A stretch of DNA of 64,000 bases from Auanema rhodensis (taxonomy: Eukaryota; Animalia; Nematoda). This document shows, piece by piece, positions 15,963 through 26,876 of this stretch (position 1 is the first letter of the stretch; every line of letters begins with the position of its first letter). Under the pieces are notes generated by a model. That model was not told where the DNA came from, ran no database searches, and saw nothing but the letters and a program-made list of their open reading frames with translations. The stretch is taken from assembly GCA_964057225.1 (NCBI GenBank), contig OZ059894.1, forward strand, positions 10,478,001-10,542,000, given 5' to 3'. Made by a program: the position numbers and the translations under genes.

Positions 15963-18173
15963 TTAATCCAGTGGGATGTCTGTTTGTAATTCAACTTCTG
16001 GTTTAATTGATGGTGTTGGATCAGGAGACGATGATACAAAAGCTGATGAATGAGCTTAAATAGAAAAGAAATAATAAAAACTATTTTGAATCTAAACTTA
16101 CATCCCATGAAGGAATTAATACTACGTTGTAGGTTTAAACGGCGATTATCAAGTTTTATTATACTAACGATAGGATCATAGATTTCTTTTCGAGCTCGTA
16201 GTCCCCACAGAAAATCATTGTGATTGAATTTGTACAATTTTCTGTAAATGAAACGAATTAGTAAAAGGGTTGAGTTACACAACCAACTTTGCCAATTTTA
16301 CAGTGGTATTTGGTAGAGTTTTCATCAAATATCCTTCTACATCATTAGAATTGGCTAACCAATCATAATCAGAATAGAAAAGATACATTGGCACATTGAC
16401 AGCATGCAAATCATAAACTGGTGGCTCAGCCTGAGATGTTGAATTTAATATGGATTAGAAGATAACTAATTGCTTACTGTTCCATAGTGATTAAGATTTC
16501 CTGTTAGTCCATAATCGAAAGAGCTCATACTGCGGCGGCGGACCATTTGAGCAAAGTGTAGCATGTTTCGAACAGATGTTCCAGCTGGGTTATGAGCTAG
16601 GAAGATTCCAATTCTTGTCTGAATAAAAATCAGCTTATACAATAAATTGAATAGAGAAACGAACCGAATTGAGTTGGTTACTATTAGGCCCACTGACAGA
16701 AAATATAAAGTTTTCACAGATGGGATTATTCACAGAAACATCGCATATTATATCAGTTAACATTCGCGTAAAGATATTATTGGACATAAATTCATTATCT
16801 CCGAATATAGAATAGACTAACTGAAACAGTTTTTGATGTATTTTATCATATATATTTATATTTATATATGTCCTAAATCAGTCAATCTCTTCATAGAATC
16901 ATATTTAGCGATCAAAATGTATTTTCTCATATTTTTACGTCAAATTTCACGTCAAATTTACGGGAATAATTGGAATAATCATCATTTCTTGAAAAAGTGC
17001 GTATTTGGTTGCTTTTTTCTCTCTTTTCCTACGTTTATTTGTTTAAAACGTTTATGGTGAATAGTATATTTTGACTCACGTTGAATTGATCATAAATTTT
17101 TCCTAAATAATGGAATAATCCTTGAACGTTAGACATTCTAGCCACAGGTGCAAGAGCAAACATTTTTCTTATCTTAAAATAGTAAATGTTTTTATACAAA
17201 AGTAATATTATCAATTTACTTTATTTTTGAATTCTGGCTGATGACTGAGTTCTGCAAACATAGTTAACGTTCCTTGACTATGACCAACGTAGTACAGAAA
17301 AGGCTGACTAGTTTCATTCAAAACATAATTTATCATAGCGGGTAAATCATATTTAGCCATTTGTTCCCAACTAAATTTTCAAAATATCATGTATTTAATA
17401 GAATATTTACATTACCTAAATCTCCAGAAACGAGCTTCTGAAGACCTGTACTCTGTATGTTTTTTAGAGTATATATTGCCCCTCATATTTCCTAGCCAAA
17501 CATCAAACCCAGAATCAGCAAATATGAATCCTAAAAATTACCGATTGAGAACTCGTTTGATATCATATTCTTCTTTTTTCTTTTTATATATTTATATTTA
17601 TATAGACTTCAAACCTGCAGATTGATGAGGAAGATTCAAAAGCCAAATTGAACTGGTGCAGAGAAGTCCATGTTGTAGAAAAACGACAGGACGATTTGTT
17701 GATGATGACTGTGAATCGTCTTAAGAATATGAATAAGATTTTTTAAAATGAGAGATATGCACTTTTTCCTCGTGGAATTCGATGTAATTGGAGAATATAT
17801 CCATCTTCAGTAACAACATTATGAATTTCCACAGGATAACCCCAATGATTCACTATTTCTGGCTAAATTAATAGGATTAGGTCAAGAAATGACGATTTTT
17901 CCAACTTACAACGTTCATTAAGGCTTCAATATCTAGACTAATTGAAGGCATTGATTTATTTATGAAGTTGAAGTCTTGAAACTGTGGAGTACTAAGGGAT
18001 GGCATAGGTGTCGGTATCATCATGGTGGCATAAGGATTGAATATATCATTCTGGACGGGTGCTCCATACAAAAATTCCCTTCCTTTGAACTGTTGTTGTG
18101 AATGCAAGGAAGGAATTAGAAGCAGGAGAAGGAAAAACGAGAAAAGGATTGAATCGTGAGTCCACGATTGCAT
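15963..18173 (-). CDS. Lysosomal acid lipase-like (lipl family) alpha/beta hydrolase
   Basis: Signal peptide, [37 protein letters not shown], catalytic [13 protein letters not shown]. Confidence 0.95.
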
Positions 18174-19542: not shown

Positions 19543-20948
19543 ATGGCTGCCCTTGTCCGACAAGACTCTGCACACATTGTAAGCCACGCCTTTTTTTTGA
19601 CCTTTTAATTTTTCAAAAAATTCATTGAAGATCTTCTGTTCAGATTTTTTTTAGTCGTTAGTTTAGGGCTTCCTTGCACCCATGCCAAAGGAACAGTATA
19701 TGTGTCAATTGTGTGCTAATCACGGAATATTTAATCAACCTAAAAAAGGCCACAAGCAAAGATGTCCTCATAAGCATTGTTCGTAAGTTTGTATTTTTCT
19801 TTAATATTTTCTCTCTTTTCGTTCTCAGATGTAATCTATGCGCTTTAAATACAAAACGAAGAGCTCTTGATCAAATCGAACGGCATCTTAAAAGTTCAAA
19901 TTCTGGAGAAAAACATTCTACAACTGAAGTGGAAGTAGAAAGACCACTTAGTGTTCTTCCAGGTCAGTTTGAATCTAAACAAACTAAAGAATGAAAACTT
20001 GAGCTGTATGCTCATGATAGAACTTATTTCGTTTGACTCTGAAGGCGCAAAAATACAAACTTGACTTTTCAAAAAAACATTTTACTGGAAAAAAGGGAAA
20101 ATAAATCGAACAAGTTTGAAGAAATTAAACACAAAAAACATGAAAAAAACAAAGACTTATCGAGATCTATCTAGATAATTTACACACATTTTTCACCCCT
20201 ACCTTGGTCGGCTGTCCTTTCATTACTAGCAAACCAATTAATTTCACAACTGTCCAAGCCATTCCAATAGTCTCTTCACTAATCATAGACCACCCACTTA
20301 GATACTTCTCAATCTATCCAGCAACATATGATGATAAAACTTTAATATTTCTCATTTAAGGTTCCAATTCAAACAATAATACCAATCACAATGTACTTAC
20401 CTCTCCATCTCTCTTGCCCTCCCAACAACCTATTCAAGCATTTTCCATTAGGTGAGAAGAATATAAGCTTTTACGAAAAATAAGTTCGGCTTTCGAGAAC
20501 TTGATGAGAAACTATTCACTGTCACCACATTTGAATACAAAGTTACTGTAGTAACTAGCGTTCACGTTTGGTTTTTAACAAAATCCTCCCGTTTTTAAGG
20601 CATTATCGTAGGAAAAAAATAATTAAAGCTTCTCGGTGATCCAACCTGCTTGTATCAGTGTTTGAAAGCTTCCTTATCTGAAACATGTGAAAGGGAATTT
20701 GAAATAATGATCTTACAGTGAAACAAGAAATGTGAATTTAACTCCTTTCTATTCGACAACTCAATTTCCATTAATAGAAGGATCACATGGGAAAGTTTGT
20801 AAGTTTATTGTTTCCAAGTTGACTAAAGTTCAGAAGGGTGAATGTACTTGCAGTTGATGTAGCACTGAGCAACTTTTCCGATGCGTTCAACCAGATTCCT
20901 CAATCTCGACGGAGCATATTCCACAGTGCAGAAGATCTTGCTCGATGA
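19543..20948 (+). CDS. mab-23: DM-domain transcription factor MAB-23
   Basis: MPKEQYMCQLCANHGIFNQPKKGHKQRCPHKHCSCNLCALNTKRRALDQIER matches the MAB-23 DM domain as I recall it; three further exons (about 20361-20451, 20719-20798, 20854-20948) continue the frame. Confidence 0.9.
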
Positions 20949-21302
20949 ACCTCTCTTCTCATCTCTACTCGTTCCCTTTGTTTGTTAATATTTTGTATTT
21001 ATTGAATTCTAATACAGTATTGGATCTCACTGTTTTTTAAGAATTTATAAGAAATCATCGAGAATAATTTGCTGTAAGTGTCGGAAACAGGCACCAATAC
21101 GTCTGGTGTTCATTCCCATTTTTTCCGCTCAGGTTTTTTCATCCCATTTCATGAGGTTTAAGCAATTGACAAACGTCAACTTTAGCTGTGAAATATGCGA
21201 ACAATTAAAATAATACGAATATAATAGAATATTATGTAATTCAGTTATTTCTTTGAAAATTTTCCAAAAACGAAATTTTAAAAAAGGAGTTTCAGCAAAA
21301 AG
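20021..21302 (+). repeat. Direct repeat copy 1 (1282 bp): 3' half of mab-23 plus downstream DNA
   Basis: Identical to 23553-24834 except one mismatch that I could find (T20630 vs A24162). Confidence 0.97.
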
Positions 21303-21932
21303 GAAATCTTTTCTACATTTTTGTGATTAAATAAAAATGAATTATACTTTCCCGGATGAGAAGTGAAACGTGTAACGACGTATGCGTAAATCAGCTACTT
21401 TCTATAGATAAGGACGCTTACGAAACATCATAAAGGCTGGAAATTTAATAGGCTTGTACCAACGTTCATCAAGAATTATCTTTGCAACTCTCTATCCATA
21501 TTATAGACAGGCTAAAGCTATAATTTAACATTCGATTCCTTTGAAAGAAATATTCAGTAGTAACAATTTCCATAAAAAAAATAGTTTCAAAACCACGATT
21601 CTGGGTCGGAATTTCTGAAAAAAAAAACAATTTTATGCTGACATTTGCTGTTATTTTAAGTGTCACGTGCTTGTTTATTAACTTATAAAGGTTTCAATCT
21701 CAATACAGACGTTATATATTATATTTAAAATATGATATTTAAGAGTGTTATCATTATAAGAATTACGATGTCCGGGATGACATATCAATTAATACTTCTA
21801 TTTAAACAATTAGATAAGGATTTCACTTCTATTTCGTATGAAATCGCTTCTTCGGTTGGAGCAATTGTCTGACATCTTGTTTAAATTCTTCGATTCTTGC
21901 ATTATTATTATTAATAATACGGGATTTTTAGG

Positions 21933-23473
21933 ATGAAGTTAGCCATCCTCATTGGCCTCGTCGGCCTTGCAATGGCCGCTGTACACCAGCACAAACTTTC
22001 ATGGCATCCTTCTAGACGTATGCGCCTGAAAGAAAGCGGAGAACTTGAAGCTTATATTGAGCACCAACAAATGCTTCGTACTAGCAACTTAGATAGTGTC
22101 TCCGAAACTGTAAACCTACCTATAATGAGAAATATTCTGAATGAAGAACTTGTAGGTTCTTGATTATGGAGATTATGAATATGTTGGAAACATCACCATC
22201 GGAACTCCACCACAAAACTTCGTTGTTGTACTTGATACTGGATCTGCCAATCTCTGGATTCCAGCCACTAATTGCGAGTAAGTTCCCTACAGACGTTTCC
22301 ATAGTATTGAAATGTAATTCACATTATTTACAGTTTCTCATGCGTTAGAAAGCATAAGTTTGATACCAAAAAGTCCTCCACCTTTAAGGAGAACGGAAAG
22401 CCATGGAAGATCACATACGGTTCTGGAAATGCTAAGGGAGTTTTGGCTGAAGATACTGTCAGAGTATGTTTTTTATATGAATATCAGTACACTTTTGTTA
22501 ATATTTCCTATCGTTGTGTGCACAATTATCTAAGAACTGAACACTGTATGATAACTGTCTTTTAGTTCGGAGCTTCTGGAACCAAGCAACTTGCTGTCCC
22601 AGCTACTACTTTTGGAGTTGCCTCTCATATCTCTTCTGATTTCTTAACTGATCCTGCTGATGGTATTCTTGGTCTTGCTTTCACCACTCTTGCCGTAGAT
22701 AAAGTTGTACCACCTCTTATCAATGCTATCAACCAAAGTATGATCAGATTTGTATAGCACGTATTAATTTTCTAATTAGATTTACTCGACAAGCCTTTGT
22801 TCACTGTCTGGCTTGAGCACAGAGGTGAGTTGAATGGAGTCGGTGGAGGAGTCTTCACTTATGGAGATATTGACACCACAAACTGCGGACCTGTTATTGC
22901 TTATGAACCATTATCTTCTGCCACATACTTTGAGTTCAAGGTAAATGAGAATTTCGGAAGAAACATATAATAATTTTGTTTCCAGACCCATGGATTCAAC
23001 TATGGACCTTTCTCTTCCACTAAGACCGCAAGTGTCATCTCTGACACTGGAACCTCTCTCATTGGAGGAAGCAAGGCTCTTGTAAAATCTTTGGCCGAAG
23101 CCGCTGGAGGAAAAGTATGCTAAGAACCTAGATGAATACTAAAACAGTGATTTTGTTCAGTACAATGCTCAAGAGGAAATCTATACCATTGACTGTAATG
23201 CTCAGCCAGGAAACTTCAACATCGTCATTGGAGCAAACACCTATTCAATTCAACCTGTTAACATGATTCTTAAGGTACACCTATCTAATAGACCAGGATT
23301 ATTCATTAATTGCTTTTCAGAACGGTAAGGATTGCATCCTTGCTCTATTCCCCTTCAGTTCCGGAGGATTCGGACCTTCCTGGATTCTTGGAGATCCATT
23401 CATCCGTCAATACTGTAACATCTATGATATCGGAAACAAAAGAATGGGATTCGCCACTTCTAAGCAGAAGTAA
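21933..23473 (+). CDS. Secreted pepsin-family aspartic protease (ASP-6/ASP-5-like), copy A
   Basis: Signal peptide, [58 protein letters not shown]. Confidence 0.96.
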
Positions 23474-23552
23474 AAGCCAACGTATGATTGTAAATACAAT
23501 AGATAATAAAGATATTCAGACATTACTTGTATCTCTAAATGAAATTATACTA

Positions 23553-24834
23553 AACTTATTTCGTTTGACTCTGAAGGCGCAAAAATACAAACTTGACTTT
23601 TCAAAAAAACATTTTACTGGAAAAAAGGGAAAATAAATCGAACAAGTTTGAAGAAATTAAACACAAAAAACATGAAAAAAACAAAGACTTATCGAGATCT
23701 ATCTAGATAATTTACACACATTTTTCACCCCTACCTTGGTCGGCTGTCCTTTCATTACTAGCAAACCAATTAATTTCACAACTGTCCAAGCCATTCCAAT
23801 AGTCTCTTCACTAATCATAGACCACCCACTTAGATACTTCTCAATCTATCCAGCAACATATGATGATAAAACTTTAATATTTCTCATTTAAGGTTCCAAT
23901 TCAAACAATAATACCAATCACAATGTACTTACCTCTCCATCTCTCTTGCCCTCCCAACAACCTATTCAAGCATTTTCCATTAGGTGAGAAGAATATAAGC
24001 TTTTACGAAAAATAAGTTCGGCTTTCGAGAACTTGATGAGAAACTATTCACTGTCACCACATTTGAATACAAAGTTACTGTAGTAACTAGCGTTCACGTT
24101 TGGTTTTTAACAAAATCCTCCCGTTTTTAAGGCATTATCGTAGGAAAAAAATAATTAAAGCATCTCGGTGATCCAACCTGCTTGTATCAGTGTTTGAAAG
24201 CTTCCTTATCTGAAACATGTGAAAGGGAATTTGAAATAATGATCTTACAGTGAAACAAGAAATGTGAATTTAACTCCTTTCTATTCGACAACTCAATTTC
24301 CATTAATAGAAGGATCACATGGGAAAGTTTGTAAGTTTATTGTTTCCAAGTTGACTAAAGTTCAGAAGGGTGAATGTACTTGCAGTTGATGTAGCACTGA
24401 GCAACTTTTCCGATGCGTTCAACCAGATTCCTCAATCTCGACGGAGCATATTCCACAGTGCAGAAGATCTTGCTCGATGAACCTCTCTTCTCATCTCTAC
24501 TCGTTCCCTTTGTTTGTTAATATTTTGTATTTATTGAATTCTAATACAGTATTGGATCTCACTGTTTTTTAAGAATTTATAAGAAATCATCGAGAATAAT
24601 TTGCTGTAAGTGTCGGAAACAGGCACCAATACGTCTGGTGTTCATTCCCATTTTTTCCGCTCAGGTTTTTTCATCCCATTTCATGAGGTTTAAGCAATTG
24701 ACAAACGTCAACTTTAGCTGTGAAATATGCGAACAATTAAAATAATACGAATATAATAGAATATTATGTAATTCAGTTATTTCTTTGAAAATTTTCCAAA
24801 AACGAAATTTTAAAAAAGGAGTTTCAGCAAAAAG
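23553..24834 (+). repeat. Direct repeat copy 2 (1282 bp): promoterless duplicate of mab-23 exons 4-6 and 3' UTR, no DM domain
   Basis: Offset 3532 bp from copy 1; begins about 80 nt after the copy A protease stop codon. Confidence 0.97.
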
Positions 24835-25362
24835 TAATTTGAAAATAATCCTTCCTACCTTAGGTAAGTATGCACAATTTATAATATAATAATCTTCTCG
24901 AACATAATAGAATGTTGAAAGCAAATTTATTCCTTTGTTCTCGATAACAACAATGATATCTTAAATTAAAAAGTGCAAAATAAAAGTTTGAAATACGATA
25001 TAAATAAGGTTTTAGGCTATTTAATTCTTTCAATTCATGAAAATATGAATTTTAATAAATAATATGTGATTTTAAGCTGTTGTTCTTGTCATATGCAAAC
25101 TTTTAGTCTTCGTGATTGCTCGAAAATTAAAATATATACATATCTGTATATATATGGAGAATACTGTTGTTCATTCCAAGTATTTGCCTTACATTTCTGT
25201 TTTTATTGTCTAATAGAATCAATTGCAGTGACAGCAATTGCTAATTGTTCTGATTCTTATTTTAGGATTTCATAACTCTGTTCAGGTTTATCAAATCCCT
25301 GATTCAAATCTTATAAAACTTAAATTTTATATAAATTCAGCAACATTTCATTTTTTTTCGGA

Positions 25363-26876
<1,514 letters not shown>

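What the first reader, a model, noticed from the sequence alone, without database searches (positions are those of the whole stretch)
20021..24834. Near-perfect 1.28-kb duplicate of the mab-23 3' half brackets an aspartic protease gene
Seen: 20021-21302 and 23553-24834 differ at one base that I could find, and it is intronic. The repeat carries mab-23 exons 4-6, the stop codon and the 3' UTR but not the DM domain, and protease A lies entirely between the copies. Inference: (a) recombination between the copies would delete or amplify protease A as a 3532-bp unit while leaving mab-23 intact, i.e. a copy-number cassette; (b) mab-23 exon 3 could splice to either 3' half and give an identical protein, with the protease inside an optional intron; (c) read-through from the protease could transcribe the orphan mab-23 tail. 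The two proteases are far more diverged than the repeat, so one tandem duplication of the whole unit does not explain the layout.
Basis: partly seen in the sequence, partly recalled or inferred. Interest (0 to 1): 0.8.

Follow-up and report, generated by a model that had tools for sequence, protein, structure and literature searches.

The report
Young partial duplicate of mab-23 tail
A nematode genome holds a real, very recent 1.28-kb copy of the back half of the male-development gene mab-23, lying between two old aspartic-protease genes; it is most likely a dead gene fragment of a kind common in nematodes.

Summary
20021-21302 and 23553-24834 are 1282-bp direct repeats with one mismatch (20630 T / 24162 A), and identity falls to chance at the very next base on both sides. 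The repeat carries the last three coding exons, the stop codon and the 3' UTR of a complete 166-aa MAB-23 orthologue, without the DM domain. An intact, expressed pepsin-type protease gene (A) lies between the copies, and its old paralogue (B) follows copy 2.

Short-read contigs from two other studies break at the repeat edges and show both right-hand continuations. Repeat contigs have about twice the word depth of the flanks and of protease A. This argues against an assembly or haplotype artefact, but no long read was available.

Proteases A and B are 53% identical (dS 0.77), roughly 1000 times more diverged than the repeat. The best reading is a recent blunt-ended copy of the mab-23 tail inserted into the A-B intergenic spacer. 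It has no promoter and no in-frame ATG, so it is a partial duplicate, probably a pseudogene.

The protease A RNA contig stops 32 nt before copy 2. The scan's unchecked notes list many similar near-perfect local duplicates in this genome. Ordinary; low interest.

The parts
20021..21302 (+). Repeat copy 1: the resident 3' half of mab-23 (most of the intron after exon 19829-19962, the last three coding exons, stop, 3' UTR, and about 80 nt beyond the likely poly(A) site)
   Evidence: 1281/1282 identity to copy 2; exon model, ATTAAA at 21204.
23553..24834 (+). Repeat copy 2: orphan mab-23 tail in the spacer between protease A and protease B. It has no DM exons, and the MAB-23 frame of its exons has no ATG.
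   Evidence: the translation of exons 3-5 contains no Met; tblastn hits at 23892-23981, 24243-24362 and 24388-24477.
19682..20948 (+). mab-23 orthologue CDS of 166 aa, with exons 19682-19782, 19829-19962, 20361-20451, 20719-20798 and 20854-20948
   Evidence: all introns GT..AG, open frame; PF00751 DM in exon 1; RNA joints 19782>19829 and 20798>20854; end-to-end alignment with proteins named MAB-23, sharing the C-terminal SIFHSAE-LAR motif.
20630..20630 (+). The only difference between the copies (T here, A at 24162), in the intron before exon 20719-20798
21303..21932 (+). Spacer A, the upstream region of protease A. It has no detectable similarity to spacer B.
   Evidence: local alignment z = 0.79 against shuffles.
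21933..23473 (+). Protease A: 8 exons, 385 aa, pepsin-type (A1) aspartic protease with DTGS and DTGT motifs. It is expressed.
   Evidence: 1195-nt RNA contig with seven GT..AG joints, ending at 23521; open CDS; PF00026 on four exons above Pfam's cut-off, and on a fifth just below it.
24835..25362 (+). Spacer B, the upstream region of protease B
25363..26876 (+). Protease B: 8 exons with the same phases as A, 379 aa, both DTG motifs intact. Intron 5 has a GC donor.
   Evidence: gene model, 53% aa identity to A, dS 0.77, dN 0.36; PF00026.

Best explanation
This is a young, DNA-level, partial gene duplication. The ancestral order was mab-23, protease A, protease B, all on the + strand, with the two proteases being old tandem paralogues. 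Recently, a 1282-bp piece running from inside a mab-23 intron to about 350 bp past its stop codon was copied. The copy was inserted, with blunt junctions, 2.25 kb downstream into the spacer between the protease A poly(A) site and the protease B promoter. mab-23 keeps working through copy 1. Copy 2 has no promoter, no DM domain and no in-frame start codon, so it is a non-coding gene fragment. Its only predictable effect is structural: unequal recombination between the two direct repeats could delete or add the 3532-bp unit holding protease A. Shown here: the repeat, its content, its sharp edges, the age contrast with the proteases, and support from independent reads. Inferred: the direction of copying (copy 1 as parent), the mechanism, and the lack of function.
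For: The repeats are 1281/1282 identical, and identity drops to 20-35% at the next base on both sides. The flanks show no residual homology (z = 0.79 and -0.53). There is no shared base at either junction, no terminal inverted repeat and no third copy. Introns are retained, so this is not a retrocopy. Copy 1 completes a 166-aa protein that aligns end to end with MAB-23 orthologues. Proteases A and B share all eight exon phases but are only 53% identical, with dS 0.77, so they duplicated long before the repeat arose. In the contigs of two non-source runs from two studies, contigs inside the repeat have word depths of 390-475 (X8) and 1684-2329 (X9). Flank and protease A contigs have 171-245 (X8) and 696-1069 (X9). 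Contigs stop at 24834 and restart 30 nt before 21303 and 24835, as expected at a two-way repeat branch, and an X10 contig bridges 24834|24835 with 173+134 nt. The protease A mRNA contig ends at 23521, before copy 2. In C. elegans the median duplication span is 1.4 kb, and about half of young duplicates are partial or chimeric (PMC2728529).
Against: No read spans both copies, because only short-read contigs could be laid. The tool warns that contig depth is not a copy number. By its criterion of 31 nt on both sides, only one of the four junctions is truly bridged. The others are seen with 23-30 nt on the shorter side. No outgroup or single-copy strain was found, so the direction of copying and the ancestral order are inferred by parsimony alone. 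In the guessed-RNA run, the last two mab-23 exons lie in a contig of depth 15.9 that starts inside an intron. The DM exons have depth 3. Some independent transcription of the tail is therefore not excluded.
Confidence: 0.7

Rival explanations
1. This is an old tandem duplication of the whole unit (mab-23 tail plus protease), as old as the protease pair, with the tail kept identical by continuing gene conversion (concerted evolution) while everything else diverged.
For: The layout is periodic: tail-protease, tail-protease, with offsets of 3406-3532 bp. Gene conversion does seem to act at this locus, because protease exon 2 plus intron 2 are 84% identical while the other six intron pairs are at shuffle level. 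With neutral sequence between A and B already unalignable, the lack of flank homology does not by itself exclude an old duplication.
Against: The edges are knife-sharp: 100% identity up to the last base, then chance level, with no gradient. About 1000 of the 1282 bp are intron, UTR or intergenic sequence in an orphan copy under no selection. Keeping such a tract identical over a period in which dS reached 0.77 would need uninterrupted conversion with fixed end points in non-homologous DNA.
Confidence: 0.12
2. The direction of copying or the ancestral order is different. Copy 2 is the original mab-23 tail, and copy 1 arose upstream of it, either alone or together with spacer A and protease A. 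For example, protease A might once have been nested in the mab-23 intron, or the block of tail plus protease A might have been inserted into that intron.
For: The two copies are interchangeable in sequence, and the spliced protein is the same with either. Nothing in the junctions marks which copy is derived.
Against: It needs either a same-strand protease gene, with its own poly(A) signal, nested inside the mab-23 intron, or an event that brought protease A from elsewhere to sit exactly beside its own old paralogue. Tandem origin of A and B is the simpler account of their adjacency and shared exon structure.
Confidence: 0.1
3. This is an assembly or haplotype artefact, and the genome has only one copy of the tail at this locus.
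For: Near-identical repeats of about 1.3 kb are a classic place for assembly errors. No spanning read was seen, and the best-holding runs may be the source of the assembly.
Against: Two runs not flagged as source, from two studies, show about twofold word depth on the repeat contigs. Protease A and both flanks have equal, single depth. The contigs show both continuations after the repeat's right edge (to 21303 and to 24835) and, at its left edge, one entering copy 2 from protease A. These require two copies. The only linear arrangement of these pieces is the one in the window.
Confidence: 0.04
4. Copy 2 is functional. It might serve as an alternative 3' half for mab-23, as a separately transcribed regulatory RNA or 3' UTR decoy, or as a selected device for varying protease A copy number.
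For: The RNA contig over the last two exons starts inside the intron and has about five times the depth of the DM-exon contig. All splice sites of copy 2 are intact.
Against: Intactness is expected at this age: one substitution in 1282 bp. No RNA contig was placed on copy 2. The protease A transcript ends before it. The tail has no in-frame ATG, and protease A depth equals flank depth. Library 3' bias explains the depth difference more simply.
Confidence: 0.05

Closest known systems
Young partial gene duplicates of Caenorhabditis elegans (Katju and Lynch class 'partial'; summarised in PMC2728529)
   Same: It is a short DNA-level duplication (1.28 kb, against a median span of 1.4 kb) on the same chromosome, close by. 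It covers only part of a gene, retains introns and has almost no divergence.
   Different: It comes from a different, unidentified AT-rich nematode. The copy is not adjacent to its parent but is separated from it by a whole unrelated gene, so it forms a direct repeat around that gene.
Low-copy repeats that mediate non-allelic homologous recombination (segmental-duplication-flanked deletion and duplication loci)
   Same: Two direct repeats of more than 1 kb at 99.9% identity flank a unique gene-bearing segment. Unequal exchange would remove or add that segment and leave the outer genes intact.
   Different: The scale is much smaller (1.3-kb repeats, a 3.5-kb unit). No deletion or amplification allele has been observed here.
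mab-23 of C. elegans and its nematode orthologues (DM-domain transcription factor of male development)
   Same: It has an N-terminal DM domain, a length of about 170 aa, a shared start (MPKEQYMCQLCANHG) and a C-terminal SIFHSAE-LAR motif. It aligns end to end with proteins named MAB-23.
   Different: It is only 38-45% identical to any named relative. A partial tail duplicate next to the gene did not come up in one paper search on mab-23, DM domain and duplication.

Membership tests
MAB-23 / DM-domain transcription factors | DM DNA-binding domain (PF00751) | tested here: met
   exon 19682-19780 hits PF00751 (E 5.2e-07, 29.9 bits, cut-off 27). The second half of the domain lies in exon 19829-19962 (alignment).
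MAB-23 / DM-domain transcription factors | Full-length similarity to proteins named MAB-23, beyond the DM domain | tested here: met
   residues 1-166 align with proteins of 166-230 aa, including CBN-MAB-23, CRE-MAB-23 and MAB23 of T. vitrinus (E 1e-36 to 1e-42). One search shows the shared C-terminal motif with the Steinernema proteins. A reciprocal best-hit test against all DM paralogues was not done.
Peptidase family A1 (pepsin-like aspartic proteases) | PF00026 domain across the protein | tested here: met
   exons of protease A and of protease B hit PF00026 at profile positions 1-33, 82-131, 191-227 and 274-315.
Peptidase family A1 (pepsin-like aspartic proteases) | Two catalytic Asp-Thr-Gly motifs | tested here: met
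   A has VLDTGSA and SDTGTS. B has IDTGSA and SDTGTS. Catalytic activity was not tested.
Partial (structurally incomplete) gene duplicate | Two near-identical genomic copies, one lacking part of the parent's coding sequence, with introns retained | tested here: met
   copy 2 has coding exons 3-5 with their introns, and no DM exons occur near it.
Partial (structurally incomplete) gene duplicate | Both copies exist in the organism, not only in the assembly | tested here: inconclusive
   the repeat shows about twofold contig word depth, and contigs branch at its edges, in two independent runs. One junction is bridged by more than 31 nt on each side. No spanning long read was available.
Transposable element | Terminal repeats, target-site duplication, many copies | tested here: not met
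   no inverted repeats; the ends are unlike each other, and a TA on each side of copy 2 is the only shared flank; the window holds two copies; depth is about 2x, not higher.
Retrocopy (processed pseudogene) | Loss of introns, poly(A) tail | tested here: not met
   all introns are present in copy 2, and the copy starts inside an intron.

The most novel reading that the evidence does not exclude
The orphan tail is not inert. It may be transcribed on its own, from a start inside the repeat or by read-through, as a non-coding RNA carrying the mab-23 3' UTR, or it may be used as an alternative 3' half. In that case a male-development regulator and a secreted protease would be coupled in one recombining, copy-number-variable unit.
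Probability: 0.06. Interest if true: 0.5.

Novelty: new member of a known kind. Interest (0 to 1): 0.2.

Why it matters
It is a clean, datable example of how nematode genomes scatter gene fragments. The breakpoints are exact to the base, the junctions are blunt, and the piece landed a gene away from its source. It also marks a spot where protease A could be lost or gained by unequal exchange, which is useful to know when comparing strains. It does not change what is known about mab-23 or about aspartic proteases.

Tried and rejected
- **Outgroup synteny.** The two closest named MAB-23 proteins (Steinernema) are not on record as gene positions. The S. ratti locus has no protease neighbour. P0050 sits on 1.3-kb contigs only. 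This gave no outgroup.
- **Exact look-up of a window ORF** (first exon of protease A), to find other assemblies: nothing on record.
- **Species identity.** It could not be established. Run names are coded, and the scan's notes give no name.
- **Full-length homology searches.** The spliced MAB-23 and protease proteins have no reference, so I did not type them in. I used stop-free references instead.
- **Non-coding RNA gene inside the repeat as a reason for its duplication.** Rfam gives no match at E up to 0.1.
- **Transposon, retrocopy and chance.** All rejected; see the membership tests.
- **X10 as a divergent strain.** Its 0.34 share of words is low coverage, not divergence, because the listed pieces are identical to the window.
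- **The 20630/24162 difference.** It could not be checked in the runs. No row for either place appears in the 'other letters' table, and the contigs that cover it are not all listed.
Full report
**Observation.** At an offset of 3532 bp, 20021-21302 and 23553-24834 match at 1281 of 1282 positions. The one difference is 20630 T against 24162 A. In 50-nt bins identity is 1.0 throughout the repeat and 0.2-0.35 immediately outside it on both sides. A self-comparison of the whole window finds only these two copies, plus one short 84% match between the two protease genes.

**What the repeat contains.**
- A five-exon coding model on the + strand has GT..AG introns throughout and gives a 166-aa protein. 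The exons are 19682-19782, 19829-19962, 20361-20451, 20719-20798 and 20854-20948.
- Exon 1 hits the DM domain (PF00751).
- A word search with a stop-free reference over exon 2 found Steinernema DM proteins of 166-175 aa. A second search with one of these brought in proteins that their sources name MAB-23, from C. brenneri, C. remanei, Brugia, Pristionchus and Trichostrongylus.
- The window's protein aligns with these from residue 1 to 166 at 38-45% identity. With the Steinernema proteins aligned it shares the start MPKEQYMCQLCANHG and the C-terminal SIFHSAE-LAR motif.
- The gene is therefore a complete mab-23 orthologue of a nematode that has no close relative in the protein collection.
- The repeat begins 58 nt into the intron after exon 19829-19962 and ends 354 nt after the stop. 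It holds the last three coding exons, the stop, the 3' UTR (ATTAAA at 21204) and a little more, but no DM exon.
- The three exons contain no methionine in the MAB-23 frame, so copy 2 cannot encode the C-terminal part by itself.

**The proteases.**
- An RNA contig of 1195 nt defines protease A as eight exons from 21933 to 23473. The contig has seven GT..AG joints and ends at 23521.
- The CDS is open, 385 aa, and has DTGS and DTGT motifs. Four of its exons hit PF00026 above Pfam's cut-off and a fifth falls just below it.
- An AATAAA lies at about 23504. The mRNA therefore ends roughly 30 nt before copy 2 begins at 23553.
- Protease B (25363-26876) has the same eight exons in the same phases, 379 aa and both active-site motifs. 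One intron has a GC donor.
- A and B are 53% identical in protein, with dS 0.77 and dN 0.36. Six of their seven intron pairs, their 3' UTRs and their upstream spacers are no more alike than shuffled sequence.
- They are old tandem paralogues, about a thousand times more diverged than the repeat (0.078%).

- Word depth was compared in X8 and X9, two runs from two studies that are not flagged as possible sources of the assembly.

| Run | Contigs inside the repeat | Contigs on the flanks and on protease A |
|---|---|---|
| X8 | 475, 444, 390 | 171-245 |
| X9 | 2329, 1684 | 696-1069 |

- Contigs end exactly at 24834. They restart 30 nt before 21303 and 30 nt before 24835, which is what a de Bruijn graph does where one repeat has two continuations.
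- One contig enters copy 2 from protease A (23357-23581).
- In X10, one contig crosses 20020|20021 (23+128 nt) and another crosses 24834|24835 (173+134 nt).
The tool also warns that contig depth is not a copy number. I therefore take this as good but not final support.
- Four different junctions and single-depth protease A fit only one linear arrangement, the one in the window.
- No heterozygous differences appear in the 5.9 kb, so a haplotype mix is unlikely.

**Origin.**
- A single tandem duplication of the 3532-bp unit would have left a second spacer A and protease A after copy 2. Instead there is unrelated spacer B and a protease at 53% identity.
- Two accounts remain: a recent copy of the 1282-bp piece alone, or an old unit duplication whose tails have been kept identical by gene conversion.
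- Conversion does seem to occur at this locus. Protease exon 2 plus intron 2 are 84% identical while the other introns are at chance level.
- However, the repeat's edges drop from 100% to chance within one base, with no gradient. Most of the tract is intron, UTR and intergenic DNA in an orphan copy under no selection. Conversion cannot start or end in DNA without homology.
- I therefore favour a recent duplication (0.7) over concerted evolution (0.12).
- The junctions share no base between source and target flanks. There are no terminal repeats, and the introns are retained. This looks like a blunt, end-joining-type or template-switch insertion of genomic DNA, not a transposon or retrocopy.
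- That copy 1 is the parent, and that the order mab-23, A, B is ancestral, rests on parsimony. The alternatives need a protease nested on the same strand inside the mab-23 intron, or need protease A to arrive from elsewhere right beside its own paralogue.
- With a borrowed C. elegans-like mutation rate of about 2-3e-9 per site per generation (my own knowledge, not tested), one difference in 1282 bp suggests on the order of 1e5 generations, with a very wide error.

**Function.**
- Splicing from 19962 to either acceptor gives the same protein. Copy 2 lies beyond the mab-23 3' end and the whole protease A gene, so copy 1 should be used almost always.
- No RNA contig was laid on copy 2, and the protease A transcript stops before it. 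Read-through is therefore unsupported, though contigs cannot show rare molecules.
- One oddity remains. The RNA contig over the last two mab-23 exons (20641-20798 joined to 20854-20976) starts 78 nt inside the intron and has depth 15.9. The DM-exon contig has depth 3, and exon 20361-20451 has no contig at all.
- Library 3' bias or intron retention is the simple explanation. An internal start, or transcription of copy 2, cannot be excluded, because the two copies are identical over the contig.
- Recombination between the repeats would indeed delete or add the protease A unit and leave mab-23 whole. That is true of any such repeat, and no copy-number change is visible in the two runs.

**Comparison with what is known.** In C. 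elegans the median span of young duplicates is 1.4 kb, and about half are partial or chimeric (PMC2728529). This case fits that class. The scan's own unchecked notes list many other near-perfect local duplicates in this genome, which suggests a common process here rather than a special device. Rfam finds no RNA gene in the region.

**Verdict.** It is a real, young, partial duplicate of the mab-23 tail inserted between two old protease paralogues, and it is probably inert. It is a new member of a known kind, of low interest.

Noticed in passing
window 22164-22334 versus 25588-25757: Exon 2 plus intron 2 of the two protease paralogues are 84% identical, and intron 2 alone scores z = 10 against shuffles. 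The other six intron pairs are at chance level. This is either an older gene-conversion patch or constraint around the DTGS active-site exon.
   Followed up: partly
window 26349: Intron 5 of protease B has a GC donor (gcatat) where protease A has GT. The frame needs this intron. No RNA data were available for B, so it is unknown whether B is spliced correctly or is starting to decay.
   Followed up: no
window 20641-20976: An RNA contig over the last two mab-23 exons begins 78 nt inside the upstream intron. Its depth is about five times that of the DM-exon contig, and exon 20361-20451 has no contig.
   Followed up: partly
window 23361-23404 (loose ends): Contigs of a third aspartic-protease paralogue, located elsewhere in the genome, cross-match the conserved last exon. 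They are highly represented in the guessed-RNA run (depth 404-941, against 102 for protease A).
   Followed up: no
window 16275-17853, - strand: A multi-exon lipase gene (PF04083 lipase N-terminal region, PF00561 alpha/beta hydrolase) lies upstream of mab-23 on the opposite strand.
   Followed up: partly
L001 (Strongyloides ratti, LN609528.1 507637-528650): The S. ratti mab-23 orthologue has no aspartic-protease neighbour. The mab-23/protease adjacency is therefore not shared with S. ratti, the one other nematode checked.
   Followed up: partly
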